This document shows positions 21,413 through 56,700 of a DNA stretch of 64,000 nt, one piece after another (position 1 is the first letter of the stretch; every line of letters starts with the position of its first letter). The notes below the pieces were generated by a model. It ran no database searches and had not been told where the DNA came from. It worked only from the letters and a program-made list of their open reading frames with translations. The stretch lies in the IMG/VR virus record IMGVR_UViG_3300032116_000004, positions 1-64,000 of that record. One strand, given 5' to 3'. The position numbers were made by a program, and so were the translations under genes.

Positions 21413-21652
21413 ATGTCAGTAGAATTAGCCGCAGAAATTTGGACCGAAGTCAAACGCTATGTCAACTCTGTAGACAGATCTGAAGCCGCAGAAACCTTGG
21501 TCACGGTATTGATTGACAACGACGTCAGCGCCGAAGAAATCAAAAATTCATTCAAGGGCGATGGCGACGTAAAACGTGCCTTGGCAGAATATCTCAAGGA
21601 AGAAGAAGATCTTGGGGAAGATGAAGAAGACGATTACGATGACGAGTATTGA
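21413..21652 (+). CDS. hypothetical acidic protein
   Basis: GGAGG RBS; 79 aa with acidic tail. Confidence 0.75.
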   Translation: MSVELAAEIWTEVKRYVNSVDRSEAAETLVTVLIDNDVSAEEIKNSFKGDGDVKRALAEYLKEEEDLGEDEEDDYDDEY

Positions 21653-22902: not shown

Positions 22903-23344
22903 CCGAGTAGTTGCTAACCTGAGTGCTATTCCAGATTTTATAGCACACTACGAGCGCGAGCTAGAGGAAGCCAAACGCGAGTGCAGGATCGGTGGCTTTG
23001 TTGAAACCAATATCAAGGAATTGCCCGGTATCACTGAACATCGTTTTAACCAATTGCAAGAGATAGAAGCCATCTTAAACTATCTCAATATCCAATTGCG
23101 CAAGATCCGCCGTCGCCATTTCCAGAAGTATCTCGAGGGTTACGCCCGGGCGCTGACCAGCCGAGACGCGGAAAAATATGTAGATGGCGAGGACGAGGTC
23201 ATTGATTTTGAGACCATCATCAACGAAGTGGCTCTCTTACGTAATCGTTGGTTGGGTATCATGAAAGGGCTTGATACTAAACAATGGCAAATGGGACATA
23301 TCGTCCGCTTGCGCACAGCGGGGATGGAAGACATCCAGGTATGA
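22892..23344 (+). CDS. uvsY: recombination mediator UvsY
   Basis: Helical 150 aa near uvsX; KYVDGED, K.LD.K.WQ...IVRLR.AG. Confidence 0.8.
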   Translation: MWYSRVVANLSAIPDFIAHYERELEEAKRECRIGGFVETNIKELPGITEHRFNQLQEIEAILNYLNIQLRKIRRRHFQKYLEGYARALTSRDAEKYVDGEDEVIDFETIINEVALLRNRWLGIMKGLDTKQWQMGHIVRLRTAGMEDIQV

Positions 23345-24369
23345 TCAGTCGTTTACGACTGCATGACAATGGCCGAGTTTTATATTATGATGCTTGGCGC
23401 AATATCACTTCACAAGAACTGAGATCCGATGGGTTTGTTCCATTACTGGAACAGGATCTTGAACAACACAGACTTTCATTGAACGATGCCCGCGATTATA
23501 TTTGGGTTTTTGATCTCAAGCCCGAAGGCATTGATGCTGGAGACATGCAAGGAATGTTTGATTTGTTATGTCAAAGAAGACAGGTTCCTGTTGAAAATTT
23601 CCGGGTAATATTCAGTTGTGTAGAACAGATTGATCGATTGCCTTATCGAGCTACATCACTGCCCGACAGATTGATCTACAATGGTAATTGGTATGATCAT
23701 CTTCGGCATTACCGCATCAACTGGGCAGGCTTGCCAATGACGCACCGACTGACCTGTCTCATGCGAAGGCCCAGCATCGGCAGAGCGAATCTCGCAAAAC
23801 GGCTGCTATCAAAATTCAGATCTGATGAACTGATAATGACGTTTGGCACCAATGGTGTGGAGCCCAGCGATGACATCAAGCAGTTGATATGGCCGCGACC
23901 ATATCCCATGATTGTTGACCGCCCTATGGCTGATCAAGTTTTTCAGCATCGCATAGATCATGATTTTTTCTATCGAGCACCTGTGAATCTAGTAGTAGAA
24001 AGTTCCAGCCAGATCGACCCCAACACCTGGCGCAGTATTTTTATCACAGAAAAAACTTTCAAAGCCATGGCATGGCATCAGTTTCCTGTTTGGTATGCAG
24101 TGCCCGGCTTGGTGGCCCAAGTGAGGCGCATGGGGTTTGATGTGTTTGATGATGTGTTTGACAATCACTCATATGATGATATACCAGATCCCTGGGTGCG
24201 CATGACTCAGGTAGTGCAATTGGTGCATCGTGTCAGCCAGCAAGACATGGTAGAATTGAGACAACAACATTGGGATCGATTGCAAGCCAATGCTCAACTG
24301 ATCGACTATATACATGCCACAGCCATAGTTAGGCATACACAGATATTGGAAGAATTTTCTCATGCATAA
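23341..24369 (+). CDS. putative glycosyltransferase-like protein (FITEKT family)
   Basis: CLMRRP...R, NLVVES, FITEKTFK, GFDVFDD..D.HSYD; reminiscent of GT10-like donor-binding segment. Confidence 0.55.
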   Translation: MISRLRLHDNGRVLYYDAWRNITSQELRSDGFVPLLEQDLEQHRLSLNDARDYIWVFDLKPEGIDAGDMQGMFDLLCQRRQVPVENFRVIFSCVEQIDRLPYRATSLPDRLIYNGNWYDHLRHYRINWAGLPMTHRLTCLMRRPSIGRANLAKRLLSKFRSDELIMTFGTNGVEPSDDIKQLIWPRPYPMIVDRPMADQVFQHRIDHDFFYRAPVNLVVESSSQIDPNTWRSIFITEKTFKAMAWHQFPVWYAVPGLVAQVRRMGFDVFDDVFDNHSYDDIPDPWVRMTQVVQLVHRVSQQDMVELRQQHWDRLQANAQLIDYIHATAIVRHTQILEEFSHA

Positions 24370-25126
24370 AGGATTCTCAAGTCCACAAGCCAGCCACGAG
24401 CACAGTCTTCAAGTGCTGGAATCGCTGTATGAACACGACGATTTCATGGAAAGCGTGGGCCGCGTGATAGACCTAGGATGCGGAGCAGATGCTCTGGATC
24501 TCACCTGGTGGGCCACCCGAACCACCAGAGATGACAACCCTAGACCTCTCAATATCACTTGCACAGGTGTGGATACCGTGGTCGATTCACTGGCACCCCC
24601 AGCTAGACGTGCCGGCGTCCACTACATAAAACAAGATCTAGAGACTCTCAATCAAACCAAACACCGATATGACCTACTGTGGTGTCATGACACGTTCCAA
24701 TACATGATCAATCCCCTGGGTTGCCTGTCCAATTGGTGGAACATCGCCAATCCTGGTGCCATGCTGGTGCTCATGGTGCCGCAAACCACCAACATCGAAT
24801 TCCAGCGCCAGGCCTTTGACCTGCCCAGTCATTGTTATTACAATCACACCGTGGTCAGCTTGATGTATATGTTGGCCACTACCGGTTGGGACTGCTCATC
24901 GGGATTCTTCCAAAAAAATCCCGCAGATCCCTGGATCAACATCATAGTGTATCGCAGTGGTCATCAGCCCAGCGATCCCAAGACCACGTCGTGGTATCAT
25001 CTAGCCGAACGAGGCATGTTACCTTCCAGCGCAGTGGTAAGTTTGGATCGATATGGCTATGTGCGCCAGAGAGATCTGTTATTGCCTTGGTTGGACAAAA
25101 GCCTGGCCTATTTTGGCGATCATTGA
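24362..25126 (+). CDS. class I SAM-dependent methyltransferase
   Basis: VIDLGCG, YDLLWCHDTFQY, PGAML. Confidence 0.8.
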   Translation: MHKGFSSPQASHEHSLQVLESLYEHDDFMESVGRVIDLGCGADALDLTWWATRTTRDDNPRPLNITCTGVDTVVDSLAPPARRAGVHYIKQDLETLNQTKHRYDLLWCHDTFQYMINPLGCLSNWWNIANPGAMLVLMVPQTTNIEFQRQAFDLPSHCYYNHTVVSLMYMLATTGWDCSSGFFQKNPADPWINIIVYRSGHQPSDPKTTSWYHLAERGMLPSSAVVSLDRYGYVRQRDLLLPWLDKSLAYFGDH

Positions 25127-25145
25127 TCGCAATAAACTGCGTAGA

Positions 25146-25151
25146 TAAATA
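25146..25151 (+). promoter_or_regulatory. late promoter-like TAAATA heading the modification operon
   Basis: TAAATA then GGAGG RBS and ATG 25167. Confidence 0.6.
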
Positions 25152-25166
25152 CCCCATGGAGGTCAC

Positions 25167-25895
25167 ATGGGATTCAGCAATCTAATCACAAAAGCAGTGG
25201 GTTCAGTAGCGCCCGAACTTGTAACTAATCGTCGGCCCACAGTCATTGAACTGGGCAATCAAACTCTCAAGAACACCAAGGCACGCGGTGAAATCTATCA
25301 AAAGCTAGGCATATCTCCGCCCGCAGAATTAGGTGGAACCAAAGATTGGTATCTCAGTCTAGGGTTTGATCGATACTTGGCCATTGACGTCAATACTGAA
25401 CGAGATGCAGTGGCCATGGATCTCAACGTAGACATACCCAAGACCTACGGATTCCATGAGCAGTTTGATCTGGTCACAAACAACGGCACCGGGGAACATG
25501 TGTTCAACCAATACATGGTGTTCAAGAATGCACATGACCTTTGCCGTGTGGGCGGATTCATGATCCATGTGCTGCCATTCTATCGCTGGGTGGATCATGG
25601 ATTCTTCAACTACAACCCCAATCTGTTTCCGTGCTTGGCCAATCAAAACGATTATGAGTTGAGAGAGTTATGGATCGCATCCAGTGATGCCCAATATCTA
25701 CACAAACTAGACGTCAACAATCTGGGTCGCAACAAAGGCTACAGAGGCAAACTAGAACTTGATACCTGGGAAAGCGATCCCATGGTGGCTGCTGTGTTCC
25801 GCAAAGTCAAGGATGCACCATTTGAAATACCCATACAGCACATGTATGGTGGTGACAACATCAGCGACGATGGCATCGCTGGAAATTACCGATGA
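25167..25895 (+). CDS. class I SAM-dependent methyltransferase-like protein
   Basis: IELGNQ, DLN, FDLVTNNGTGEHVFNQ, GG.MIH..P, DHGFFNY. Confidence 0.75.
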   Translation: MGFSNLITKAVGSVAPELVTNRRPTVIELGNQTLKNTKARGEIYQKLGISPPAELGGTKDWYLSLGFDRYLAIDVNTERDAVAMDLNVDIPKTYGFHEQFDLVTNNGTGEHVFNQYMVFKNAHDLCRVGGFMIHVLPFYRWVDHGFFNYNPNLFPCLANQNDYELRELWIASSDAQYLHKLDVNNLGRNKGYRGKLELDTWESDPMVAAVFRKVKDAPFEIPIQHMYGGDNISDDGIAGNYR

Positions 25896-26551
25896 TCACT
25901 GCTGACAGACCTTATTCCGAACAGGAACTTGCAGTGGCCGAACGTGTGCGCGAGTTCACGATGACCAGCGGAAAATTCGTGATTTTTACCCAGCGCCTGA
26001 TACAAGATCTCAATCAACGAGACATACCCGGAGCGGTGGTTGAATGTGGCGTCTGGCGCGGAGGTCAGATCATGGCCGCTGCCATGGTAGACGATCATGA
26101 AAGAGATTATTGGCTCTATGATACATTTGAAGGTATGCAAGGAGTGTCTGAATATGATTATAGAGAAGGCAAACATGCCACTGAAAGTTTAAAATGGCGC
26201 AAAGGTGGACACGAAGGCCGCAACTGGTGCAGAGCCGATCTAGATGATGTGCAGAACAATGTATGGTCGGTATTGCCCCCGCATAGGACACATTTCATCA
26301 AGGGAGATGTAAGCCAAACTTTGACATCATCGGATCTACCGGATCAGATAGCATTTTTGAGATTGGACACAGATTTTTATCTCAGCACAAAGATTGAGTT
26401 AGAAGTGTTATATCCTCGACTGGTCAGTGGTGGGTATCTCGTGATTGATGACTATCACAGTTGGGATGGCGCTAAAAAAGCCGTGGATGAATATTTTGGT
26501 CCCGACCAAGAATTCACCAAACAAAAATTTGTAGTGGTGCAGAAATCATGA
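25892..26551 (+). CDS. TylF/MycF/NovP-family sugar O-methyltransferase
   Basis: IPGAVVECGVWRGG, YDTFEGM, IKG.V..TL, IAFLRLDTDFY.ST..EL..LYPRLVSGG...IDDY..W.G.KKAVDEYF. Confidence 0.92.
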   Translation: MITADRPYSEQELAVAERVREFTMTSGKFVIFTQRLIQDLNQRDIPGAVVECGVWRGGQIMAAAMVDDHERDYWLYDTFEGMQGVSEYDYREGKHATESLKWRKGGHEGRNWCRADLDDVQNNVWSVLPPHRTHFIKGDVSQTLTSSDLPDQIAFLRLDTDFYLSTKIELEVLYPRLVSGGYLVIDDYHSWDGAKKAVDEYFGPDQEFTKQKFVVVQKS

Positions 26552-27357
26552 ATCCCACTTGGACATGCTTTACCAGTTTTAATCGCAGGCTATACGACAT
26601 CATCGCCGAGGAGATGCTGGCTTCATGGTTGCATCACTGGCCCCAAGATGCAAAAATGGTAGTGTATCTTGAAGACGATATCGATTTGCCCACGGATCCT
26701 CGACTTGAGATCAGAGACTGGCAGACCTGTTGCGGTCAAAACTTTGATCATATCGCGCAGAACTCAACCACACTGATGCCTCATTGGGGCAGTCAGCATA
26801 CTCAACGCTATACCAAAAAAGGACTGGCCTGGGTCCATATGATGAATCACAGTCACGATCGGATATGCTGGTTAGATGCAGATAGTTTTACCATGCGTCC
26901 TTTTGAATCGCAACATCTGGATCGTGCGTTGGAAGATCACTGTGTGGCACTGTTTGATGTGAGTCGGCCCGTGGATGATCGATTGGTCGTTACCGCAGAA
27001 AGTGGCTTCGTGTTGATCGACACTGCACATGCTGATTTTTCCAAATTCCGAGATGAATATTCGCGCTATTATCTTGAGCCTTGCATGCCTGAATCAGCAT
27101 GGATGTTTTGGGACGGAGAGATATGCATGCATGCGGCATTGACCGTGGATCATGTCAATCTTCGATCTCAATGCCATAGGAAAAAAAGCACACCCATACA
27201 TGGTCATTGGTTGGGAGAATGGTTCCGTCATATGAAAACCAAGAGAAAAAAACACTGGCCTCTTTCGGCCTATAGAGAATTATGGCTCAATGGTCATGAA
27301 TTATCATCGGATGATATCAAGCCATTTTATCAACAAGGAAACAGCGATGCATCTTGA
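26548..27357 (+). CDS. GT-A fold glycosyltransferase
   Basis: ICWLDAD DxD motif, ESGFV, WDG, H.K; paralog of 31959-32798. Confidence 0.7.
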   Translation: MNPTWTCFTSFNRRLYDIIAEEMLASWLHHWPQDAKMVVYLEDDIDLPTDPRLEIRDWQTCCGQNFDHIAQNSTTLMPHWGSQHTQRYTKKGLAWVHMMNHSHDRICWLDADSFTMRPFESQHLDRALEDHCVALFDVSRPVDDRLVVTAESGFVLIDTAHADFSKFRDEYSRYYLEPCMPESAWMFWDGEICMHAALTVDHVNLRSQCHRKKSTPIHGHWLGEWFRHMKTKRKKHWPLSAYRELWLNGHELSSDDIKPFYQQGNSDAS

Positions 27358-28081
27358 TGTAACACAGACCATAACCAAAGACGATCTCCTACAGGATCCT
27401 TGCCCGTATTTTTGCATCCATGATGCTCTACCGCAGACATTGTATGATCAGTTGATAGCAGAGTATCCTGAAGCACACATGATGCAGGATGGCAAGACAC
27501 ATTTCCAGGCACGCCGTTATCGTCAGCATGAATTCGTTCCAGGAACTGTGTCTCCATTGTGGCAAGAATTTGTGGCCTATCACAACAGTGTGTCTTTCAA
27601 AAATCGTGTGTTGGATCTTTTTGAACCAGCCCTGGAAAAGTATTATCCAGAGTTTGCCCAAGATCTACGTGATGCAGGAGTATCAGAACGGCATGATGGT
27701 CGCGCTGGCACAGTGCAGATGGAAGTGCAGTTCGTTCTTAACGGTCAGCAAGATACCACAGTGAGGACCACGCATTTGGACAACAGCCGAGAACTGTTTG
27801 CTGGCCTGTTGTATATGCGCAAACCCGAAGACACCAGCGTGGGCGGCGACATCCAGGTGTTCCGCAAACTGGTGCCCGCTCCAGAATACACTGGCATCAG
27901 AGAAGTCAATCCGGATCATGTGGCAGCAGCCGGAACAGTTCCGTATCGTGCCAATACCATGATACTGTTTCTCAACACAGCAGATACCATCCACGGCGTG
28001 ACCCCGCGTATAGGTGCCAACTGTTTGCGCAGATACATCAACATAGACGCACATCAAGATAGGAAATTATTCCGAGTATGA
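27347..28081 (+). CDS. 2OG-Fe(II) oxygenase superfamily protein
   Basis: DP.PYF.I.DALP, THLDN, GLLYMR, GGD, N...F.NT...IHGVTPR, RRYIN. Confidence 0.8.
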   Translation: MHLDVTQTITKDDLLQDPCPYFCIHDALPQTLYDQLIAEYPEAHMMQDGKTHFQARRYRQHEFVPGTVSPLWQEFVAYHNSVSFKNRVLDLFEPALEKYYPEFAQDLRDAGVSERHDGRAGTVQMEVQFVLNGQQDTTVRTTHLDNSRELFAGLLYMRKPEDTSVGGDIQVFRKLVPAPEYTGIREVNPDHVAAAGTVPYRANTMILFLNTADTIHGVTPRIGANCLRRYINIDAHQDRKLFRV

Positions 28082-28638
28082 CTATAATCAATCAAAGTTA
28101 TCAACAACAGATACAGGCCATGCATGAAAAAGGCAAGTTCAACAACGGTGCCAAGCAATTCAAATTGGTCAGACCATTTATCGAACAATATCAACCCCGC
28201 GATCTCATTGATTTTGGTTGCGGCAAAGGTGCGCTGATCGCTACCATCAAAGAGAATTTTCCTGCCATAGAAGTGTTTGGATACGATCCAGGCAATCCAG
28301 ATTTCGCTGTCATGCCCACGCGGACTTTCGACACTATCATATCCACTGATGCCATCGAACATATCGAACCCGAGCACTTGGCTCAGAGCCTGGCAGTGAT
28401 GAGCGACAAGATGCAACGCTGTGGATTTTTCCGCATAGCCTGCCATCCTGCTAAAAAACTATTACCCGATGGGCGTAACTGCCATCTTATCGTAAAAGAG
28501 CCGGACTGGTGGCGAGAGCAGATACTTAAAAACATGCAGGTCAATATCGTATGGGAACGAGTAGAACCTTTCGATAGACGAGAAAAAAATCCCATACTGT
28601 TTGGCAGCAAATATGATGTGATATTGGAAAAACGATGA
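28078..28638 (+). CDS. class I SAM-dependent methyltransferase
   Basis: IDFGCGKG, YDPG, FDTIISTDAIEHI, N.HLIV....WW. Confidence 0.85.
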   Translation: MTIINQSYQQQIQAMHEKGKFNNGAKQFKLVRPFIEQYQPRDLIDFGCGKGALIATIKENFPAIEVFGYDPGNPDFAVMPTRTFDTIISTDAIEHIEPEHLAQSLAVMSDKMQRCGFFRIACHPAKKLLPDGRNCHLIVKEPDWWREQILKNMQVNIVWERVEPFDRREKNPILFGSKYDVILEKR

Positions 28639-29402
28639 AGAAAATAGTTTTGATAACCGGGGGATTCGATCCCATACATTCTGGGCACCTTGCTTACATC
28701 CAAGCAGCCAAGGCACTGGGAGACATCCTAGTGATAGGTGCCAACTCCGATGCATGGTTGCGACAAAAGAAAGGGCGTGCATTCATGCCTCTGCGCGAAC
28801 GCACTGCCATATTACGGGCTATCGCTGGTGTGGACTACGTGATAGATTTTGATGATTCAGACGGAACTGCAAAAAATGCCATCAGGATGTGTCGGCAGAG
28901 TTATCCGCAGGATGAGATTATTTTCGCCAACGGCGGTGATAGGACTGACTACAACTGTCCTGAGATGGATGTGGCCGATGACAATGTGAAGTTTGTGTTT
29001 GGCATAGGTGGATTCAACAAAGCCAATTCTTCGTCCTGGATACTGGAAGAATGGAAAGCGCCTCAGACACGACGTCCATGGGGTTATTATCGCGTGTTGC
29101 ATGAAACACCGGGAGTGAAAGTCAAAGAACTCACAGTAGAGCCAGGAGCCGCTCTCAGCATGCAACGTCATCAAGATCGCGCAGAATTCTGGTTGGTAGC
29201 ATCGGGCGAAGCCACGGTCTACACAGTGGATTCAACTACCACGGACACTGAACTACAGGGCCGTTATCAGCGTCATCAGTATCTACATATCAGCACACAT
29301 GAATGGCATCAGTTGGTCAACGAAGATCCTAACCCGCTCAAGATAGTGGAGATACAGTATGGTGATCGTTGTGAAGAAGAGGACATAGAAAGACAGTTAT
29401 GA
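28635..29402 (+). CDS. cytidylyltransferase-like (HxGH) domain fused to mannose-6-phosphate isomerase type II-like cupin
   Basis: TGGFDPIHSGH, G.NSD.WL..KKG, FANGGDR, SSS; then RPWGYY, KVKEL.V.PG..LS.QRH..R.E.W, EIQYG..C.E.DIER. Confidence 0.85.
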   Translation: MKKIVLITGGFDPIHSGHLAYIQAAKALGDILVIGANSDAWLRQKKGRAFMPLRERTAILRAIAGVDYVIDFDDSDGTAKNAIRMCRQSYPQDEIIFANGGDRTDYNCPEMDVADDNVKFVFGIGGFNKANSSSWILEEWKAPQTRRPWGYYRVLHETPGVKVKELTVEPGAALSMQRHQDRAEFWLVASGEATVYTVDSTTTDTELQGRYQRHQYLHISTHEWHQLVNEDPNPLKIVEIQYGDRCEEEDIERQL

Positions 29403-31063
29403 CTACCAATGTTTACATAGGCTGGGACAGCCGAGAACCCATAGCCGCCGATGTGTGCGAATACAGCATACAGCAAAACGCATCCGAGCCTGTGACGATC
29501 CATATGCTCAAACAAGATGATCTGAGAGAGAATCTGCTTTACACCAGACCCAGAGACGTGCAGGCCAGCACGGAATTCACCTTCACGAGATTTTTAGTTC
29601 CGCGTCTCAATGACTATAAAGGCTGGGCTATATTTTGTGACTGTGATTTCCTCTGGTTGGGAGACATACAAGAACTCATAGCACAGGCTGACCCACGATA
29701 TGCCGTGATGTTGGTCAAACATGACTATCGCCCACAAAACACTGTCAAGATGGATGGCCAGCGACAAGAGTATTACCCTCGCAAGAATTGGTCCAGCATG
29801 ATATTGTTCAACTGCGGACATAAATCAAACGAATGGCTCACGCCCTATCATATCAACAATGCCACCGGACAGGAACTACACAGATTCTCTTGGCTCAAAG
29901 AAGAAGAAATTGGCGAACTCAGACCCGAGTGGAACTGGTTGGTAGGATGGTATCATCAGCCATGGGATGGCACACCCAAAGCTCTGCATTACACCGAAGG
30001 CGGCCCCTGGTTTGACAACTACAGCCATTGTGCTTACAGCGATGTATGGAAAGAATATCAATGTGATCTGCGTGCCAAACAAGTGGATCACAGCACCAAA
30101 GAGATCGATAATCTTGATTACCCCCAGGAACTACGGCAGTTACTCAAGGATGTGGTCTGGTCTATCCAAGACAGCAAAAATCTCTACGGTTACAACCAAC
30201 ACGGTTATGATGATGTGTGCCAGCGTATCCAGAGATATGCCTGTGATCCAGAACAAAAGCAATTAATAGGAATAAGTGAAATGGAAGACGTCAGCCGCAA
30301 GGCCAAAGAAAAAGGTATCAAGTATGATGGCATAGTGCATAGTTTTGTCACCGGTGCCATGGGACGCATCAGTCCCTGGGTAGATGTGGAGCACAGCGAC
30401 AACCCTATCGCTCTGCGCAGTATCACCAAGAAAAAAATAATGCAACGATGCGAACAACAGGGCCGAGACTACTACTATATCGACACAGGATATTTTGGTA
30501 ACGGAAAACTCAAAGACTATCACAGAGTGACCAAGAATGCCATGCAATGGTTAGGTCCCATCCAAGATCGGCCTAGTGATAGATTAGACCGCACCAGAGT
30601 CCGACCCTATCGTCACACACCAGGCAGTAAGATCTTGATCTGTCCGCCCAGCGAGAAAGCTATGAAATATTGGAATCTGGATCTAGATTGCTGGATGGAA
30701 AAGACCATAACCACGATCAAAGAATACACTGATCGAGAGATTGAAGTGCGTCTCAAACAGCCTCGCAGTGTGAGAGCCAGCGTGGATACCATGCAGGATG
30801 CACTCAACCGAGATGTGCATTGTGTGGTCACTTTCAATTCTATCGCCGCGGTGGAAAGTTTGATCTATGGCAAACCAGTGTTTACCATGGGGCCCAATGC
30901 CGCACAGCCATTGTCCAACAAAGATCTATCCACTATAGAAACACCGTTCATGCCGGACACTGATCAGGTCTATGCCCTTTTGCGCTGTCTAGCCTACCAT
31001 CAGTTCACAGTGGAAGAGATGCGCTCAGGCTATGCCTGGGCCGTGATAAACGGACAAGAATGA
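29399..31063 (+). CDS. two-domain glycosyltransferase (GT8-like GT-A plus capsule-synthesis-like GT-B domain)
   Basis: IGWDSRE, STEFTFTRFLVP, FCDCDFL, YPRKNWSS, HYTEGGPW; C-terminal IDTGYF, VTFNS.AAVE...GKPVF, QFTVEEM.SG. Confidence 0.78.
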   Translation: MTTNVYIGWDSREPIAADVCEYSIQQNASEPVTIHMLKQDDLRENLLYTRPRDVQASTEFTFTRFLVPRLNDYKGWAIFCDCDFLWLGDIQELIAQADPRYAVMLVKHDYRPQNTVKMDGQRQEYYPRKNWSSMILFNCGHKSNEWLTPYHINNATGQELHRFSWLKEEEIGELRPEWNWLVGWYHQPWDGTPKALHYTEGGPWFDNYSHCAYSDVWKEYQCDLRAKQVDHSTKEIDNLDYPQELRQLLKDVVWSIQDSKNLYGYNQHGYDDVCQRIQRYACDPEQKQLIGISEMEDVSRKAKEKGIKYDGIVHSFVTGAMGRISPWVDVEHSDNPIALRSITKKKIMQRCEQQGRDYYYIDTGYFGNGKLKDYHRVTKNAMQWLGPIQDRPSDRLDRTRVRPYRHTPGSKILICPPSEKAMKYWNLDLDCWMEKTITTIKEYTDREIEVRLKQPRSVRASVDTMQDALNRDVHCVVTFNSIAAVESLIYGKPVFTMGPNAAQPLSNKDLSTIETPFMPDTDQVYALLRCLAYHQFTVEEMRSGYAWAVINGQE

Positions 31064-32013
31064 AAATAGCTGTATACCTCTCTGGTGTTCCTAGGAAATC
31101 TAAAAACGAATTCAAGCGCGATATCTTGACTAGATTTGCCCATGGTGCCAAGTTGGCCGGAGATGAAGTATATCTAGTGACCCAAGACGAACCTGTAGAA
31201 TGTGATGTGGCAGTGCTCCAAGGCTGGATAGGAATGAAAACCGGCGCACACCTCGAAGTGCGCCGTCGGGTGATCAAACAACAACGGCGAAGCAATGGAC
31301 ATACTTTGGCCATGGACAGCAATCTGTTTGGTTTCTTGGAACCTGCAGATTTCAATCGTTATCTGCGTTATAGCCTAGACGACGTGTTTCCTGACACTGG
31401 TTATTATTTTGATCGCGACCCGGATCTACAACGCTGGCAACGAATCAAAGCCCATTATGGTTTCGCCGAGCGCGGATGGAGCAACAACGGTCGCAATATC
31501 TTGGTCGCACTGCAACGCAATGGCGGTTGGAGCATGGGCGACGTTCCGGTGCAACAGTGGTTGGATACCTTGTTGCCTCAGATACGCCAGCACACTGATC
31601 GACCCATTGTGATCAGACCTCACCCAGGAAATCTAGCCATAGTGCCTACCATACAACTACCATCTGTGGCCCAGGTTGCCTGGAGCACACAACAAGACAT
31701 CAGAGAAGATCTCAATCAAACCTGGGCCACAGTGACCTACAATTCCAGTCCAGGTGTGGCCAGCATACTGTGGGGAGTTCCTGCATTTGTCACAGATCCT
31801 CGACCTGCCAAAAGCCAAGCCTGGCCCTGGGCCAGCAACAACATAGCAGAGATCGAATCACCACGCCGTGGTGATCGACAAGAGTTTTATACTAAACTAG
31901 CACAATGCCATTGGAGCTCGGAAGAGATCTCCAGCGGTGAAGCCTGGCGATTCATGCGTCAGCGCCTGCCAAAGATTCCTTGCCAATACCCCACACTGCT
32001 GTTCAATCCTTGA
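31060..32013 (+). CDS. capsule polysaccharide synthesis-like (KpsS/KpsC-like) glycosyltransferase
   Basis: LVALQ, IVIRPHP, VTYNSS.GV.S..WGVP, HWS.EEI.SG.AW. Confidence 0.6.
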   Translation: MKIAVYLSGVPRKSKNEFKRDILTRFAHGAKLAGDEVYLVTQDEPVECDVAVLQGWIGMKTGAHLEVRRRVIKQQRRSNGHTLAMDSNLFGFLEPADFNRYLRYSLDDVFPDTGYYFDRDPDLQRWQRIKAHYGFAERGWSNNGRNILVALQRNGGWSMGDVPVQQWLDTLLPQIRQHTDRPIVIRPHPGNLAIVPTIQLPSVAQVAWSTQQDIREDLNQTWATVTYNSSPGVASILWGVPAFVTDPRPAKSQAWPWASNNIAEIESPRRGDRQEFYTKLAQCHWSSEEISSGEAWRFMRQRLPKIPCQYPTLLFNP

Positions 32014-32798
32014 TTGCGATCATAATCATCGGGTAGGCTATGTCCCAAGGCCTTGCGTTTAGAGCCTTTCATGTGATCCATGTATAGGCCCAAGCGACTG
32101 GCGATAAAAGGATGCCCTGGGCCTTTGCCCGGCAGTTCGGGACTGAGATTGTGGAAAGAGGTCTGTCGTTGCGTCTGGAAGTCTTTGCGGATCACGTCAA
32201 ATACAAAACTGTCATGATATTCGCGCAGGCGGAAAAGATCTCCTGTGACATAAAGATCATGCCAACGGTCCATGAAACTGAGCAAATCGGGATGGCGCCG
32301 ATTATAGGCCACCCATCCGCATTCGCTGTGATATTTTTCCCTGCGTCCCAGATAACAGGCCATTGCTGAATCTTCGCATATGGTGCTCAAGAAATTTTCC
32401 GGAACGTCCTGGAAAGTCACTGTGTCTGCATCTAACCATATCACCCAGTCGCTGTCTAGAGTGCGGCAAGCATGGATCACAGCAAAGACCTTGTGGCTGA
32501 ATCTCACTGCATCCCACTTGAAAGCATTGTCTTTGAACGGTACTCCGGTGTCTTTGGCCACCAACCCATTGGCCATGGGATCGTTGCCCCAGCGATTTTT
32601 GAAATTTACCAAATCTGGTGACTGTGCCAACAGATCCAGGATCTTCACACGATCGCTGGGCGATCTGGGCTGGCAATTTTCTGCATATACTATCAGTTCC
32701 ACATCTCCGGGCCAATGGCGATCAAAAGCGTCGATCATGCGCTGGCCATATTGTTTGAGACCCGGGGCATGGAACGTGGTAATTACTGTGTATTTCAT
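31959..32798 (-). CDS. GT-A fold glycosyltransferase
   Basis: VITTF, WDAVRFSHKV, WLDAD, YLGR...SECGW, E.HDS.VFD, DHMKG; TAAATA 7 nt before ATG 32798. Confidence 0.75.
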   Translation of the reverse strand: MKYTVITTFHAPGLKQYGQRMIDAFDRHWPGDVELIVYAENCQPRSPSDRVKILDLLAQSPDLVNFKNRWGNDPMANGLVAKDTGVPFKDNAFKWDAVRFSHKVFAVIHACRTLDSDWVIWLDADTVTFQDVPENFLSTICEDSAMACYLGRREKYHSECGWVAYNRRHPDLLSFMDRWHDLYVTGDLFRLREYHDSFVFDVIRKDFQTQRQTSFHNLSPELPGKGPGHPFIASRLGLYMDHMKGSKRKALGHSLPDDYDRNQGLNSSVGYWQGIFGRR

Positions 32799-32811
32799 CG
32801 CAGGATATTTA

Positions 32812-33660
32812 GTGATCAAGACCATCGCCTATTTTCCATCTCAGTGCGCTCTCAACAGCAAAGAAGTGTTGGGAGCCTTTTTGGATCGATGTTCTCAACA
32901 GGGATGGCAACGTAGAGAAAATTCTCTAGATGCGGATGTAGCGGTGATCTGGTCGGTGTTGTGGCACGGTCGCATGCAACCCAATCGTTCAGTGTATCAG
33001 CATTATAAAAATCTCGGCCGACCGGTGATAGTGATAGATGTGGGCGCACTGAAACGTGGGCACACATGGAAGATCGCTGTGGACAACATCACCGCACAGG
33101 GATACTATGGACACACCACGGATCTTGATTGGGATCGCCCTGCCAAATTGGGAGTTAAACTATATCCAGTGCGCTTGGGCCAACCACGATTGATCATAGC
33201 CGCGCAACACAAACAGAGTTTCCAGGTAGAATCATTGCCCAGCATGGAACACTGGATCAATCAACAAATCGCCTTGGCTCGTTCACACACAGACTTGCCC
33301 ATAGTCGTGAGACCACATCCCAGGAGTGCATTGGATCCAGGTCTTTTGCCTCGAGATGTGACCATAGAAATGCCTCGCCCTATAAAAAATACCTACGATG
33401 ATTTTGATATCAATTATGACTGCAGGGCCTTGATAAATTATAACAGTGGCTCGGGCATACAGGCCGCCCTGTCTGGTTGCCAAGTCATCGTGGATCCCAG
33501 CAGTTTGGCTGCTCCTATTCGTACCAAATACGAGGATCTAGACACGTTGGTAGATCACGACAGAGATCGATGGTTAGTTGAGATATGCCACACAGAATAC
33601 ACAGTTGATGAAATAAGACAAGGTTCATGGTTAAAAAGAATAAAAACCGCGCTGTCGTAG
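32812..33660 (+). CDS. capsule polysaccharide synthesis-like (KpsS/KpsC-like) glycosyltransferase
   Basis: GTG start; WSVLW.GRM, VVRPHP, INYNSG.GI.A, EYT.DEI..G.W. Confidence 0.6.
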   Translation: MIKTIAYFPSQCALNSKEVLGAFLDRCSQQGWQRRENSLDADVAVIWSVLWHGRMQPNRSVYQHYKNLGRPVIVIDVGALKRGHTWKIAVDNITAQGYYGHTTDLDWDRPAKLGVKLYPVRLGQPRLIIAAQHKQSFQVESLPSMEHWINQQIALARSHTDLPIVVRPHPRSALDPGLLPRDVTIEMPRPIKNTYDDFDINYDCRALINYNSGSGIQAALSGCQVIVDPSSLAAPIRTKYEDLDTLVDHDRDRWLVEICHTEYTVDEIRQGSWLKRIKTALS

Positions 33661-34385
33661 AAACAGCGACATTGGAGCATATTGATTGCGCCTGCTTGAT
33701 ACACGACACCTTGTATCCATGGGACTATGTGGACAAACTCTACAATGCTCTTTGTCGCAATCTTTCTCTGCCGGTGAGAATGCATGTTTATACCGAAAGC
33801 AACAGAGTAGTGCCTGGTCACATGATACATCATGCCTTGGAAGAATGGCCTGGTGTGCGCGGCCCCAAACGATCGTGGTGGTACAAGATACAGTTATTCA
33901 ACCCACGGCATCATAGAGGACCCATGCTGTATTTGGATCTGGACACAGTGATCGTAGGCAATCTTGATTGGGTGTGGCGATTGCCCACGGATAGATTCTG
34001 GGCTGTGCAAGACTTCAAATATCTGTTCCGGCCCAGTAAAATAGCCATGAACTCCAGCATGATGTGGTTTGATCCTGCGAAGTTCGCGCACATTTATCAG
34101 CATTTTGATCCTGGGCAAATAGCACACAAACGCACGGCATGGCACGGTGATCAGGACTATCTACATGAGATACTGGGTCCTGGCCGAGAAAATTACTTTG
34201 AAAAAACCAGGGTGCAAAGTTGGCGCTGGCAACTCAAAGATGGAGGATTTGATTTTCGCACCCGTAAATATCTAGCCCCCGGCACTGGAACACACATACC
34301 AGATTCTACCAGTGTGTTGATTTTCCATGGCAGTCCCAAACCACACGAAGTGAAAGATGCTGTGATTGAACAGCACTGGTGCTAA
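33627..34385 (+). CDS. GT8-like glycosyltransferase
   Basis: YV.KL, WWYKIQLF, LYLDLDTVI, NSSMM, GDQDY, FHGSPKPHE. Confidence 0.8.
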   Translation: MVKKNKNRAVVETATLEHIDCACLIHDTLYPWDYVDKLYNALCRNLSLPVRMHVYTESNRVVPGHMIHHALEEWPGVRGPKRSWWYKIQLFNPRHHRGPMLYLDLDTVIVGNLDWVWRLPTDRFWAVQDFKYLFRPSKIAMNSSMMWFDPAKFAHIYQHFDPGQIAHKRTAWHGDQDYLHEILGPGRENYFEKTRVQSWRWQLKDGGFDFRTRKYLAPGTGTHIPDSTSVLIFHGSPKPHEVKDAVIEQHWC

Positions 34386-34494
34386 ATACTATGTGCGGTT
34401 CGGATACGGCTGTATCGCACGATAAAGATCCGGGTGCGCTAAGCCAAGCGATAGCCAGCCTAATGTCGTATTTAGATATTCAAAAGGAAAAATT

Positions 34495-34938
34495 ATGGCA
34501 AGCGTATTATTCCGCGGACGTGTTTTTGCAACACCCTCGGCAACAACAATTTTAATCGATGGCAATGAAGTTTTTAGCGGACAAGTAGGAGTTGGACAAC
34601 CGCTAGACACAGAAATTACATTGTTTTCTACAGATATTCCAGTGACAGGCAACGCTGTTGTTACTGCCCCTGTGTCAGTATCTGTCACATCCGGTGTAAT
34701 CACTGTGGGGCAAGTAGTCCGTTCAACTGATCCATCTACCTGTGGCTTTGATATGAGAAACAACGACATCCTAATCAACGGACAAGCACCTGAATGGCCA
34801 GCCACACCAGTGGATCCAATGCCAGGCGGCACGCCCCAGAGCCCCATCTGGAGCGGTTGGTTTTTTGAAATCAGCGCAGGAGAGACCATCACGTTCACTA
34901 TTGATGTAACAAATCCAGGTAATGTATCACCCACCTGA
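34495..34938 (+). CDS. hypothetical protein (beta-rich, possibly structural)
   Basis: AAGGA RBS; own TAAATA (34383) and downstream terminator. Confidence 0.7.
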   Translation: MASVLFRGRVFATPSATTILIDGNEVFSGQVGVGQPLDTEITLFSTDIPVTGNAVVTAPVSVSVTSGVITVGQVVRSTDPSTCGFDMRNNDILINGQAPEWPATPVDPMPGGTPQSPIWSGWFFEISAGETITFTIDVTNPGNVSPT

Positions 34939-34959
34939 TATAGTTTCAAATGGTAAAAC

Positions 34960-34986
34960 AACCCTGCCTTCGGCAGGGTTTTTTTG
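34960..34986 (+). terminator. rho-independent terminator
   Basis: AACCCTGCC-TTC-GGCAGGGTT plus T-run. Confidence 0.85.
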
Positions 34987-34989
34987 TGG

Positions 34990-35018
34990 TTGACCACAAA
35001 ATCCTTTTTCCGTAAAAT
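34990..35018 (+). promoter_or_regulatory. sigma70-like early promoter
   Basis: TTGACC-17-TAAAAT. Confidence 0.65.
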
Positions 35019-35095
35019 ACAATTATAGTAAATTTTAGCAGAATAGATCTGTGGCAAAAAAACAACACCCATAAAATGGGGGATTTTTGCCCAGG

Positions 35096-35124
35096 TTGAC
35101 CAGAATTAGCCATTTTGCTATAAT
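35096..35124 (+). promoter_or_regulatory. sigma70-like early promoter
   Basis: TTGACC-17-TATAAT, then AGGAG RBS and ATG 35157. Confidence 0.8.
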
Positions 35125-36233: not shown

Positions 36234-36266
36234 AGAGGCACCCTTTAAAAAGGTGCCTCTTTTTTT
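36234..36266 (+). terminator. rho-independent terminator
   Basis: AGAGGCACC...GGTGCCTCT plus T-run. Confidence 0.8.
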
Positions 36267-36285
36267 GACCTCGCTAAGTATTCAC

Positions 36286-56669: not shown

Positions 56670-56684
56670 ATACTACTGTATACT
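56656..56684 (+). promoter_or_regulatory. sigma70-like promoter with nested TAAATA upstream of iscU
   Basis: TTGACA-17-TATACT; TAAATA 56667-56672; GGAGG RBS. Confidence 0.75.
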
Positions 56685-56700
56685 AACATAGGAGGTAGAT

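What the first reader, a model, noticed from the sequence alone, without database searches (positions are those of the whole stretch)
23341..34385. 11-kb phage-encoded glycan biosynthesis and tailoring cluster, mostly behind a late-promoter motif
Seen: 13 consecutive enzyme genes. They encode GT-A domains (two WLDAD paralogs, two GT8-like), three KpsS-like GT-B domains, a TEK-type GT, four methyltransferases including a clear TylF/MycF sugar O-methyltransferase, a 2OG oxygenase and a cytidylyltransferase-cupin fusion. TAAATA at 25146 heads the main run and another drives the antisense GT. No flippase, polymerase or export gene is present, and the enzymes have no obvious transmembrane segments. 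Inference: a cytoplasmic pathway that builds a methylated oligosaccharide at late times. Its target is probably virion proteins or hydroxylated DNA bases rather than the host surface. This is far more elaborate than T4 glucosylation.
Basis: partly seen in the sequence, partly recalled or inferred. Interest (0 to 1): 0.75.

Follow-up and report, generated by a model that had tools for sequence, protein, structure and literature searches.

The report
Jumbo-phage glycan assembly and tailoring cluster
An uncultivated 316-kb freshwater jumbo phage carries 13 adjacent sugar-building and sugar-decorating enzyme genes whose five-gene core recurs, at the same place and behind the same late-gene motif, in more than 400 related phage contigs, yet what the sugar chain is attached to is still unknown.

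Summary
Window 23341-34385 carries 13 consecutive soluble enzyme genes: four methyltransferases, a P4H-like 2OG oxygenase, a cytidylyltransferase-cupin fusion, four GT-A-type and three KpsC-fold glycosyltransferase domains, and a possible GT10-like protein.

New here:
- **Conserved core.** O8-O12 (nucleotidyltransferase-cupin, GT8+KpsC-fold fusion, KpsC-fold, GT-A, KpsC-fold) lies between uvsY and a UvsW-like helicase in at least 414 IMG/VR contigs. Cultivated relatives lack it.
- **Variable tailoring genes.** O1-O7 and O13 are lineage-specific. Relatives carry FkbM methyltransferases, sulfotransferases, a pyruvyltransferase, sugar kinases or epimerases in those slots.
- **Late motif.** TAAATA precedes structural genes genome-wide and precedes O8 in 48 of 60 relatives, against 0 of 64 for uvsY.
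[quoted passage not shown] They are a separate family without a Pfam model.
- **DNA route.** No ThyA-homolog or TET enzyme is present, so the known DNA-glycosylation route is unsupported.

Best reading: a late, cytoplasmic pathway builds a decorated glycan, most likely on virion proteins. The target is inferred, not shown. A lipid-linked acceptor remains possible, because KpsS/KpsC-type enzymes also lack membrane segments.

The parts
23341..24369 (+). O1: soluble 342-aa protein, possible GT10-like (fucosyltransferase-like) transferase. Its start overlaps the uvsY stop. Variable add-on, found in only one related locus.
   Evidence: The Atlas holds the protein from residue 20 of the long ORF. 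Neighbours are all viral. The nearest Pfam-bearing clusters are GT10 at 0.79, and structural neighbours are fused to GDP-Man-dehydratase or methyltransferase domains. No Pfam, PHROG or PDB hit. Six paralogs of its C-terminal domain occur elsewhere in the genome.
24362..25126 (+). O2: class I SAM methyltransferase
   Evidence: Methyltransf_11 E 1.5e-5, 26 bits, above the cut-off of 21.2. Homologs follow uvsY in 11 loci.
25146..25151 (+). TAAATA late-type promoter motif heading O3-O10 (and, by read-through, O12, O13 and the 34495 gene)
   Evidence: The same motif stands before the tail sheath, tail tube and virion structural genes.
25167..25895 (+). O3: probable class I methyltransferase
   Evidence: Profile A8 hits UbiG-type O-methyltransferases at E 3e-4. 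No Pfam hit.
25892..26551 (+). O4: TylF/MycF-family sugar O-methyltransferase
   Evidence: PF05711 E 1.1e-29, 104 bits
26548..27357 (+). O5: GT-A glycosyltransferase with a WLDAD motif, paralog of O11
   Evidence: BLASTP against O11 5e-8 over 270 residues. It aligns within A5.
27311..28081 (+). O6: prolyl-4-hydroxylase-like 2OG/Fe(II) oxygenase
   Evidence: 2OG-FeII_Oxy_3 E 6e-4, below the cut-off. Atlas neighbours at 0.96-0.97 carry PF13640. No Tet_JBP match in the genome.
28078..28638 (+). O7: class I SAM methyltransferase
   Evidence: Methyltransf_23 E 6e-8; phrog_24759 E 8e-25
28635..29402 (+). O8 (core): HIGH-type nucleotidyltransferase (HldC/TagD/ECT family) fused to a PMI-type cupin. 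Presumed to make the activated donor.
   Evidence: PF01467 E 2e-14 and PF01050 E 3e-22. TIGR02199 rfaE_dom_II E 1e-19. PDB profile: ECT 2e-19, HldC 8e-15, TagD 3e-14. At least 8000 homolog clusters at 60-73% identity.
29399..31063 (+). O9 (core): two-domain enzyme. Residues 1-233 are a GT8-fold glycosyltransferase with DxD. Residues from about 300 to 554 are a KpsC-fold domain that has lost the Q and HP motifs.
   Evidence: AF2 pLDDT 84. LgtC Z 17.8. KpsC Foldseek E 2e-6. The only PF05159 hit in the genome falls at 30779-30892. 414 viral contigs carry a homolog.
31060..32013 (+). O10 (core): KpsC/WbbB-fold GT-B with invariant Q152 and R186-x-H188-P189, but Gly at the nucleophile position
   Evidence: 4327 homologs without any Pfam family.
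31959..32798 (-). O11 (core): retaining-type GT-A glycosyltransferase (WLDAD), antisense to the main run
   Evidence: AF2 pLDDT 91. Foldseek GT6/GT8 hits at E 1e-7. VIA: GlyE Z 13.8, PBCV-1 A64R Z 13.6.
32806..32811 (-). TAAATA (read on the minus strand) 7 nt upstream of the O11 start
   Evidence: The motif lies upstream of O11 homologs in 20 of 40 loci.
32812..33660 (+). O12 (core): second free-standing KpsC-fold GT-B paralog (Q132, H169-P170). GTG start with an AGGA ribosome-binding site.
   Evidence: hhalign against O10 E 4e-44. Homolog hits begin at residue ~143 of the long ORF. Sequence read.
33627..34385 (+). O13: GT-A-like glycosyltransferase with a DLD motif. The relation to GT8 is not shown.
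   Evidence: phrog_1962 E 3.6e-24. hhalign to the GT8 domain 3.5%. Weak match at the DxD region to Gat1 (6mw5), E 0.34.
34495..34938 (+). Small acidic beta-rich protein (147 aa), last gene of the unit. Function unknown and not conserved.
   Evidence: Found in only one relative (45% identity).
34960..34990 (+). Rho-independent terminator that closes the transcription unit. A sigma70-like promoter (35096-35124) for the next gene follows.

Best explanation
This is a virus-encoded cytoplasmic glycan factory.

**Core (O8-O12).**
- O8 isomerises and nucleotide-activates a phosphorylated sugar or polyol.
- Two GT-A-type enzymes (the GT8 domain of O9, and O11) add hexoses from host UDP-sugars.
- The KpsC-fold paralogs O10 and O12 keep a donor-binding Gln and the CMP-binding HP motif. 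They would add a CMP/CDP-activated unit: Kdo-like acid from host CMP-Kdo, or the O8 product.

**Tailoring in this phage.** Two further GTs (O5, O13), a possible deoxyhexosyltransferase (O1), four methyltransferases and a hydroxylase tailor the product into a methylated hetero-oligosaccharide or short polymer.

**Timing and target.** The unit is transcribed late, together with structural genes. The glycan is most likely placed on a phage-encoded virion protein.

**Status of each step.**
- Shown: folds, motifs, paralogy, conservation, promoter association, lack of membrane segments.
- Inferred: donors, order of steps, polymer versus oligosaccharide, and above all the acceptor.
For: - Enzyme identities rest.
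- The core O8-O12 is syntenic between uvsY and the helicase in almost all of 79 fetched loci, out of 414 matching contigs. UvsX identity across them ranges from 60 to 99%. A conserved acceptor that travels with the phage fits this better than a host-specific one.
- TAAATA precedes the tail sheath, tail tube, virion structural proteins, a head-closure-like gene and a tailspike-like gene. It is enriched before starts.
- The motif is conserved before O8 (48/60), O12 (17/22) and O11 (20/40). It is almost absent before uvsY (0/64), SSB (1/30), O9 (1/74) and O10 (0/72).
- Slots around the core hold different tailoring genes in different relatives: FkbM and class I methyltransferases, sulfotransferases, a pyruvyltransferase, kinase-nucleotidyltransferase fusions and an epimerase/dehydratase. 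This resembles O-antigen or capsule loci that face diversifying selection on an exposed glycan.
- A second locus in the same genome supplies deoxy/amino-sugar enzymes.
- All 13 proteins are soluble, and the phage has no initiating phosphoglycosyltransferase or ABC exporter.
- The closest structural matches of the GT-A enzymes include cytoplasmic protein-glycosylating enzymes: GlyE, glycogenin, Skp1 Gat1 and PBCV-1 A64R.
- Precedents: chlorovirus capsid glycans are built by soluble viral GT plus methyltransferase proteins (PMC9614988).
Against: - No acceptor protein was identified. The gene that ends the operon (34495-34938) is not conserved.
- Fold matches to protein-glycosylating GT-A enzymes score no better than matches to LPS or blood-group enzymes, so they say nothing about the acceptor.
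- The KpsC/WbbB relatives act on lipid-linked acceptors.
- The cluster sits in the replication/recombination module, as many DNA-modifying clusters do.
- That TAAATA is 'late' rests on its association with structural genes and on resemblance to the T4 late promoter (my own knowledge), not on expression data. RNA data were uninformative.
- O1-O2 lie upstream of the motif and are probably co-transcribed with uvsY.
- In this phage O12 and O13 have no motif of their own.
Confidence: 0.42

Rival explanations
1. **Lipid-linked or host-envelope glycoconjugate.** The KpsC-fold enzymes start or extend a glycan on a host lipid (phosphatidylglycerol, undecaprenyl-PP-linked intermediates or lipid A-core), as KpsS, KpsC and WbbB do. 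Host exporters would move it to the surface. This would alter receptors (superinfection exclusion, decoy) or produce a capsule-like layer.
For: - Fold and motif kinship with KpsC/WbbB, whose known acceptors are lipid-linked (PMC10148158, PMC12887879).
- Those enzymes also lack membrane segments, so one search does not argue against this reading.
- O8 resembles enzymes of LPS-core heptose and teichoic-acid precursor synthesis.
- GT8 is the family of the LPS outer-core transferases (my own knowledge).
- Cyanophage clusters holding an O9N homolog next to kdsA/kdsB have been read as cell-surface modification (PMC12801897).
Against: - Late-type regulation, shared with structural genes and conserved across relatives, is odd for a function that must act on the cell surface before lysis.
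- The core is conserved across phages whose UvsX is only 60% identical, and so presumably have different hosts. That argues against dependence on a host-specific acceptor or exporter.
- The phage encodes no initiating transferase, flippase or ABC exporter.
- The defining Asp nucleophile of the β-Kdo transferases is missing.
Confidence: 0.25
2. **DNA hypermodification.** The glycan is built on phage DNA bases after replication and before packaging, as in phages that add hexose, heptose, Kdo or arabinose chains to 5hmC or 5hoC, to evade restriction and CRISPR.
For: - The cluster always lies inside the recombination/replication module, between uvsY and a helicase.
- Published DNA-glycan clusters use LPS-type sugars, a cytidylyltransferase and several GTs, and often neighbour replication genes (bioRxiv 10.1101/2023.12.21.572611).
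- Group transfer to DNA late in development is described (PMC13326640).
Against: - Neither this genome nor a complete relative with the core has a thymidylate-synthase homolog (PF00303) or TET/JBP (PF12851). ThyX indicates ordinary dTMP synthesis.
- The 2OG oxygenase is P4H-like and absent from most loci.
- Sulfation, pyruvylation and heavy methylation have no precedent on DNA glycans in the papers read.
- The GT-B domains are KpsC-fold, not the T4 β-GT-like fold of the known DNA GT-B enzymes.
- The phage assembles completely from at least 10 ordinary shotgun metagenomes. This is weak evidence.
Confidence: 0.12
3. **Free or small-molecule product.** The enzymes make a soluble oligosaccharide, glycoside or teichoic-acid-like polymer that is not attached to virion, DNA or envelope. 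It could act as a metabolite sink, a signalling or anti-competitor compound, or a matrix released at lysis.
For: - The enzyme palette resembles sugar tailoring in natural-product pathways. The cluster holds a TylF O-methyltransferase and a cupin. The second locus holds a DegT aminotransferase, a carbamoyltransferase, radical SAM enzymes and a GHMP kinase.
- No acceptor was found.
Against: - There is no aglycone-forming enzyme (PKS, NRPS, cyclase) in either locus among the genes scanned.
- Conservation of late, structural-gene-like regulation fits a virion component better.
Confidence: 0.08

Closest known systems
Chlorovirus PBCV-1 capsid glycosylation machinery (A064R, A061L and others) and giant-virus glycogene clusters (e.g. 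the CroV 38-kb cluster)
   Same: - Virus-encoded soluble multi-domain GTs plus SAM methyltransferases build a methylated oligosaccharide in the cytoplasm without host ER or export machinery.
- CroV combines predicted Kdo-related genes, five GTs and sugar methyltransferases (PMC9614988).
- O11's second-best structural match is A64R domain 1 (Z 13.6).
   Different: - Those are eukaryotic giant viruses, and their acceptor (the major capsid protein) is known.
- Here the virus is a tailed jumbo phage and the acceptor is unknown.
- There is no sequence-level homology beyond the GT-A fold.
- KpsC-fold domains and the nucleotidyltransferase-cupin fusion are not part of the PBCV-1 set.
Mycobacteriophage virion glycosylation operons (Freeman et al. 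2023, Cell Host Microbe; known to me and listed in the references of PMC12801897; the paper could not be opened)
   Same: Phage-encoded glycosyltransferases, in some phages with methyltransferases, decorate capsid and tail-tube proteins.
   Different: - Those are small operons of 2-4 genes in actinobacteriophages, next to structural genes.
- They have no conserved nucleotidyltransferase-cupin gene and no KpsC-fold enzymes.
- Here virion glycosylation is only inferred.
Retaining β-Kdo glycosyltransferases KpsS/KpsC (GT107), WbbB (GT99) and KrkA (GT140)
   Same: - Modified GT-B fold.
- The only PDB sequence match of the O10/O12/O9C superfamily profile is WbbB, across the R-x-H-P and N-S-S segments (E 0.0055).
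- The Gln and the HP motif are conserved in O10 and O12, with the same spacing as in KpsC and WbbB.
   Different: - The absolutely conserved Asp nucleophile of QXXXD is Gly in O10 and Ser in O12. O9C has neither Q nor HP.
- No Pfam PF05159 match reaches threshold.
- A double-displacement β-Kdo mechanism is therefore unlikely. The donor and stereochemistry are unknown.
Phage DNA glycan biosynthetic gene clusters (5hmC or 5hoC glycosylation)
   Same: - Multi-GT phage clusters use LPS-type sugars, sometimes with a cytidylyltransferase.
- They are located near replication genes (10.1101/2023.12.21.572611; PMC13326640).
   Different: - Those depend on a ThyA homolog, or on a C5-methyltransferase plus a TET-like oxygenase. 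None is present here.
- Their GT-B enzymes resemble T4 β-GT.
'Cell wall synthesis and modification' gene sets of large cyanomyoviruses (S-SCSM2R, S-SCSM1, P-SSM2), and the GT clusters of Pelagibacter phage Mosig and phiCbK-like Caulobacter phages
   Same: They hold homologs of O9 or of its separate domains:
- Mosig, 35% identity.
- CcrColossus, 32%, next to tail genes.
- S-SCSM2R, N-domain 52%, near kdsA/kdsB.
Methyltransferases, a sulfotransferase and further GTs accompany them (PMC12801897).
   Different: - Different gene order and different phage lineages.
- The function there is only speculated.
- The fixed O8-O12 arrangement between uvsY and the helicase is specific to the jumbo-phage clade found here.

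Membership tests
GT8 glycosyltransferases (O9 N-domain) | GT-A fold of the LgtC/glycogenin type | tested here: met
   VIA Z 17.8 to LgtC over residues 3-231. GT8/GT24 entries fill the top 50.
GT8 glycosyltransferases (O9 N-domain) | DxD metal/nucleotide motif and the C-terminal H..G..(K)PW motif (the motif is from my own knowledge of the family) | tested here: met
   D81-C82-D83 and H197, G201, G202, P203, W204 are invariant in 26 homologs.
GT8 glycosyltransferases (O9 N-domain) | Pfam PF01501 match above threshold | tested here: not met
   No Pfam hit at E <= 0.01. Only 43% of the members of a related Atlas cluster carry PF01501.
Retaining β-Kdo transferases GT99/GT107/GT140 (O10, O12, O9 C-domain) | Modified GT-B fold of KpsC/WbbB | tested here: met
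   Foldseek finds KpsC entries 8fuw, 6mgc and 6mgb at E 2e-6 to 1e-5 for the O9 model. O10 has TM 0.81 to an Atlas cluster partly annotated PF05159. The paralogy of the three domains is shown.
Retaining β-Kdo transferases GT99/GT107/GT140 (O10, O12, O9 C-domain) | HP CMP-binding motif (PMC12887879) | tested here: met
   O10 R186-x-H188-P189 and O12 R167-x-H169-P170 are invariant and align to the WbbB R-A-H-P segment. The motif is NOT present in the O9 C-domain, which has R-L-K-Q-P there.
Retaining β-Kdo transferases GT99/GT107/GT140 (O10, O12, O9 C-domain) | QXXXD motif with an absolutely conserved Asp nucleophile (PMC10148158, PMC12887879) | tested here: not met
   The Gln is invariant (O10 Q152, O12 Q132) at the expected 36-38 residues before the HP His. 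Position +4 is an invariant Gly (O10 G156) or Ser (O12 S136). O9C has P-P-S-E-K. This is judged from motif spacing, not from a structural superposition.
Retaining β-Kdo transferases GT99/GT107/GT140 (O10, O12, O9 C-domain) | Pfam PF05159 Capsule_synth above threshold | tested here: not met
   The only hit in the genome is in O9C: 12.4 bits against a cut-off of 20, E 0.013.
TylF/MycF O-methyltransferases (O4) | PF05711 match above the curated threshold | tested here: met
   104 bits against a cut-off of 23
Cytidylyltransferase (HIGH) family (O8 N-domain) | PF01467 above threshold and the HxGH signature | tested here: met
   54 bits against a cut-off of 21. H15-S-G-H18 is invariant in 25 homologs. 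PDB hits are ECT, HldC, TagD and CCT. Substrate specificity (heptose-1-P, glycerol-3-P or other) is not resolved.
2OG/Fe(II) oxygenases, P4H branch (O6) | Pfam match above threshold; HxD...H facial triad | tested here: inconclusive
   PF13640 scores 21.1 bits, below the cut-off of 27. Atlas neighbours at 0.96-0.97 carry PF13640. H-L-D, a distal His and an Arg are readable in the translation.
TET/JBP 5-methylpyrimidine dioxygenases | PF12851 domain | tested here: not met
   No match in this genome or in three related records, one of them complete.
Phage DNA-glycosylation clusters | An enzyme that makes the hydroxylated base: a ThyA homolog, or a C5-methyltransferase plus TET | tested here: not met
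   PF00303 is absent from the genome and from five related records. PF12851 is absent. C5-methyltransferases were not searched.
GT10 fucosyltransferases (O1) | PF00852 match or demonstrated GT10 fold | tested here: inconclusive
   No Pfam or PDB hit. The Atlas feature score to GT10 clusters is only 0.78-0.79. A VESS...ITEK segment is readable.
Virion (protein) glycosylation systems | Glycan covalently attached to a virion protein | not testable with these tools
   This needs virions, and the clade has no cultivated member in the phage collection searched.

The most novel reading that the evidence does not exclude
A large clade of freshwater and marine jumbo phages coats its virions with a self-made, acidic, capsule- or LPS-core-like glycan. 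That glycan would be methylated, and in relatives sulfated or pyruvylated. The builders would be a previously unrecognised glycosyltransferase family: KpsC fold with Gln and HP motifs, but no Asp nucleophile, hence a mechanism different from all characterised Kdo transferases. A new nucleotidyltransferase-cupin enzyme would feed it. About 12% of this phage's genome (this cluster plus a 27-kb sugar locus) would then serve a phage 'glycocalyx'.
Probability: 0.3. Interest if true: 0.85.

Novelty: new variant of a known kind. Interest (0 to 1): 0.66.

Why it matters
- **Scale.** Virus-made glycans are well documented for giant eukaryotic viruses and for a few actinobacteriophages. Glycosylated DNA is known for several phages. 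A conserved multi-enzyme glycan core in hundreds of uncultivated jumbo phages would show that self-glycosylation is a mainstream trait of large aquatic phages. It could affect adsorption, stability, grazing or immune recognition, and phage-host arms races.
- **New enzyme families.** The core families are large (4327 O10-like proteins and at least 8000 O8-like clusters) and have no Pfam model or characterised member.
- **Mechanism.** The KpsC-fold paralogs lack the catalytic Asp that defines every characterised member of that fold. They are candidates for a new GT family or mechanism and for new glyco-engineering enzymes.
- **Testability.** The fixed core with swappable tailoring genes is a natural combinatorial system that can be tested by heterologous expression.

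Tried and rejected
- **No DNA relatives among cultivated phages.** Megablast of the cluster against 50,697 phage records found nothing.
- **Many genes have no family hit.** Pfam, PHROG and NCBIfam gave nothing for O1, O3, O5, O10 and O12. O9 and O13 match only PHROG families (phrog_28018; phrog_1962), and O11 has only a sub-threshold Glycos_transf_2 hit.
- **PDB sequence-profile searches.** Those for O9, O11/O5, O12 and O1 gave nothing, and for O13 only noise-level hits. Fold prediction was needed.
- **O13 as GT8.** Not supported by profile-profile comparison.
- **Minus-strand ORF 34389-35072.** Rejected as a gene. The + strand ORF 34495-34938 has a ribosome-binding site, a terminator and a homolog.
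- **The 34495 protein as the conserved acceptor.** Rejected, because it occurs in only one relative.
- **Long form of O12 (from 32380).** Rejected as an antisense artefact.
Tested through ThyA, TET and ThyX searches and demoted.
- **Phage-encoded CMP-Kdo supply.** KdsA and KdsB are absent.
- **RNA evidence.** Only short contigs of relatives in one marine metatranscriptome, with no direction or timing.
- **Sigma70-type promoter scan.** Not above shuffles inside the cluster.
- The alignment was rebuilt without it.

Full report
**Where the window lies.** The window is the first 64 kb of a 315,778-bp IMG/VR virus record that CheckV rates 91% complete. Its UvsX-like recombinase is 62-67% identical to those of the Rak2/GAP32/CBB/Atu_ph07/Vibrio 2.275.O group of jumbo myoviruses. 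The phage is recovered in full from at least ten lake and freshwater shotgun metagenomes. No DNA-level relative exists among 50,697 deposited phage genomes.

**The observation.** Thirteen consecutive ORFs fill 23341-34385.

Four methyltransferases:
- O2 is a class I SAM methyltransferase above Pfam's threshold, and so is O7.
- O4 is a clear TylF-family O-methyltransferase (E 1e-29).
- O3 has no Pfam hit, but a small profile reaches UbiG-type O-methyltransferases (E 3e-4).

The oxygenase and the donor-making enzyme:
- O6 is a prolyl-4-hydroxylase-like 2OG oxygenase. It scores below the Pfam threshold, but its Atlas neighbours at 0.96-0.97 carry PF13640.
- O8 fuses a HIGH-type nucleotidyltransferase to a PMI-type cupin. 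The N-domain matches rfaE domain II (E 1e-19). A profile of 25 homologs hits ethanolamine-phosphate cytidylyltransferase, the heptose-1-P adenylyltransferase HldC (longest coverage), TagD and CCT. The substrate is therefore a phosphorylated sugar or alcohol, but which one is open.

The glycosyltransferases:
- An AlphaFold model of O9 (pLDDT 84) has a GT8-fold N-domain (residues 1-233; LgtC Z 17.8) with an invariant DxD and the H..GGPW segment. Its C-domain matches KpsC β-Kdo transferase structures (Foldseek E 2e-6 to 1e-5).
- O10 and O12 are free-standing paralogs of that C-domain (hhalign E 7e-22 and 4e-44).
- O11 (model pLDDT 91) is a retaining-type GT-A. Its best structural matches are GlyE (Z 13.8), the PBCV-1 capsid-glycosylating A64R domain (Z 13.6), GT6 enzymes and glycogenin.
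- O5 is the WLDAD paralog of O11.

- O1 as a GT10/'TEK' transferase.
- O13 as GT8-like. It is a PHROG 'glycosyltransferase' with a DLD motif, but profile comparison with the GT8 domain fails.

Gene starts were refined:
- O11 begins at 32798 and O12 at GTG 32812. The two genes diverge from a 13-nt gap.
- A 14th gene (34495-34938, small acidic protein) and a strong terminator (34960-34990) close the unit.
- The next gene has a near-consensus sigma70 promoter.
- None of the 13 proteins has a hydrophobic stretch compatible with a membrane helix.

**The cluster is a conserved core with variable tailoring genes.** A scan of IMG/VR with O9 found 414 contigs that encode the full two-domain protein at 45-73% identity. 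In the 79 loci fetched, the order is SSB - UvsX - UvsY - [0-5 kb variable] - O8 - O9 - O10 - O11 (usually antisense) - O12 - (O13) - helicase. This order recurs almost without exception while UvsX identity falls to 60%.

- Cultivated relatives (GAP32, Vibrio 2.275.O) have uvsY followed within one or two genes by the helicase and lack the module.
- O1-O7 and O13 are present in only 1-16 of the loci.
- In other relatives the same slots hold FkbM and class I methyltransferases, Sulfotransfer_2 enzymes, a polysaccharide pyruvyltransferase, a nucleotidyltransferase-kinase fusion, an APH-type kinase, a HAD-type protein (sub-threshold hit) and an epimerase/dehydratase.
- This layout of fixed assembly enzymes and swappable decorating enzymes resembles O-antigen and capsule loci.
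- The families are large and unannotated. There are 4327 O10-like proteins, and none of the 120 best listed carries a Pfam family. There are at least 8000 O8-like clusters at 60-73% identity. Atlas neighbours are almost all viral.

**Regulation.**
- TAAATA occurs 121 times in the genome. 56 copies lie 3-40 nt before a gene-start ATG, against 5-20% for hexamers of the same composition.
- In the window it precedes the tail sheath, the tail tube, two virion structural proteins, a head-closure-like gene and a tailspike-like gene. It does not precede the terminase, SSB, UvsX, the helicases or the ribonucleotide reductase genes.
- Here it heads O3 (25146) and, on the other strand, O11 (32811-32806).
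- Across relatives it lies within 45 nt upstream of O8 in 48/60 loci, of O12 in 17/22 and of O11 in 20/40. The controls are 0/64 for uvsY, 1/30 for SSB, 4/45 for UvsX, 1/74 for O9 and 0/72 for O10.
- When tailoring genes are inserted upstream of O8, as in this phage, the motif moves to the head of the enlarged operon.
It resembles the T4 late promoter TATAAATA (my own knowledge). No expression data confirm it.
- O1 and O2 lie upstream of the motif. O1 overlaps the uvsY stop, so it is probably made with the recombination genes.

**What the KpsC-fold domains are, and are not.**
- A profile of O10, O12 and O9C hits, in the whole PDB, only the β-Kdo transferase domain of WbbB (5fa0, 8csb-f; E 0.0055), across the R-x-H-P and N-S-S segments.
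- The only PF05159 signal in the genome falls in O9C, below threshold.
- O10 and O12 keep an invariant Gln 36-38 residues before an invariant HP. KpsC has 38 by my reading of its numbering, and in WbbB the Asp nucleophile lies 33 residues before the His by my recollection of its His position. The +4 position, however, is an invariant Gly (O10) or Ser (O12).
- O9C has lost both motifs.
- They therefore share the fold and probably a CMP/CDP-linked, perhaps acidic, donor. They fail the catalytic test for membership. A different mechanism is likely, either inverting or phosphotransfer from a CDP-alcohol made by O8.
- The phage has no KdsA, KdsB or other CTP_transf_3 enzyme, so any CMP-Kdo would be the host's.

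**What is the acceptor?**

*DNA.*
- Known phage DNA glycans need 5hmC, 5hmU or 5hoC made by a thymidylate-synthase homolog or by a methyltransferase plus a TET-like oxygenase (10.1101/2023.12.21.572611; PMC13326640).
- Neither enzyme is found in this genome or in a 100%-complete 364-kb relative that has the core. A normal ThyX is present.
- The position next to recombination genes is the only point in favour.

*Host envelope.*
- The fold relatives act on lipid-linked acceptors and are themselves soluble.
- Against it stand the structural-gene-like regulation, the conservation of the core across phages that must have different hosts, and the absence of any initiating transferase or exporter.

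*Virion proteins.*
- This option fits the timing, the conservation and the diversifying tailoring genes.
- It has precedents in chloroviruses (soluble GT-GT-methyltransferase proteins building methylated capsid glycans, PMC9614988) and in mycobacteriophages.
- No acceptor was identified, however. The one candidate gene inside the unit is not conserved.

I put virion protein at about 0.42, lipid or envelope at 0.25, DNA at 0.12 and a free product at 0.08.

**A second sugar locus.**
- Paralogs of the O1 C-terminal domain and of the flanking radical SAM genes led to a locus of about 27 kb at 240.7-267.2 kb of the same genome.
- It holds three NDP-sugar dehydratase/epimerase genes, a DegT aminotransferase, a carbamoyltransferase, a GHMP kinase, a small cupin, at least five radical SAM enzymes and four O1-like proteins.
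- A sigma70-type promoter, rather than TAAATA, appears to drive it.
- Together the two loci take about 12% of the genome. The phage seems to make unusual deoxy/amino sugars itself, which fits a dedicated viral glycan.

**Verdict.**
- It is a new variant of a known kind, virus-encoded cytoplasmic glycosylation. Its distinctive features are the conserved core, new enzyme families and the unknown acceptor.
- It is not a member of the Kdo-transferase families or of the known DNA-glycosylation clusters.

Noticed in passing
G000 (own genome) about 240,700-267,200, outside the window; loci L087 and L088: A second sugar-biosynthesis locus of about 27 kb. It holds three NAD epimerase/GDP-mannose-dehydratase-type genes, a DegT aminotransferase, a carbamoyltransferase, a GHMP kinase, a small cupin, at least five radical SAM genes and four proteins with an O1-like C-terminal domain. 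The long minus-strand operon starts after a terminator and an extended -10 (TGtTATAAT), not after TAAATA.
   Followed up: partly
window 21649-22902 and 36253-37458; further copies in G000 near 99.7, 124.5, 146.1, 251.8-256.5, 261.9, 297.4 and 300.0 kb: About twelve paralogous radical SAM genes in one phage genome, two of them flanking the glycan cluster. Their function is unknown.
   Followed up: no
window 30296-31063 (O9 C-domain): The KpsC-fold domain fused to the GT8 domain has lost both the Gln and the HP motif that its free-standing paralogs O10 and O12 keep. Even so it is highly conserved (invariant P416-P417-S418, K420, R446, R451). It may be non-catalytic (acceptor binding or scaffold) or use another chemistry.
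   Followed up: partly
window 32380-32825: A 145-codon open frame antisense to O11 extends the O12 ORF upstream. tblastn even 'conserves' it in some relatives, because O11 is conserved on the other strand. The real O12 start is GTG 32812. The O11 and O12 start codons are divergent and only 13 nt apart.
   Followed up: yes
window 34495-34990: A small acidic, Val/Thr/Ser/Pro-rich, probably beta-rich protein (147 aa) ends the operon, followed by a strong terminator. It is found in only one relative (45% identity). An overlapping 54-codon ORF starts 2 nt after a TAAATA at 34383.
   Followed up: partly
genome-wide, e.g. window 7162, 12310, 16532, 53913: In about 20 genes the ATG lies only 4-8 nt after TAAATA. 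These presumed late mRNAs would then be leaderless or nearly so, while others (such as O3) keep a GGAGG ribosome-binding site.
   Followed up: no
L008:11641-12600: In a close relative (O9 72% identical), the O10 homolog contains two in-frame stop codons in the tblastn alignment. This could be a pseudogene or an assembly error.
   Followed up: no
window 56667-57093: A NifU-like Fe-S assembly gene sits among late genes with a sigma70-like TTGACA-N17-TATACT promoter. It may be relevant to the many radical SAM enzymes.
   Followed up: no
L003 (Caulobacter phage CcrColossus 98.8-103.4 kb) and L002 (Pelagibacter phage Mosig 124.8-130.7 kb): Cultivated phages of other lineages carry split versions of O9 beside other glycan genes. 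In CcrColossus these are a sialyltransferase-like gene and a GT9-like gene, directly after the tail genes and before the lysis cassette. In Mosig they are two methyltransferases and a sulfotransferase. These phages could serve as experimental models.
   Followed up: partly
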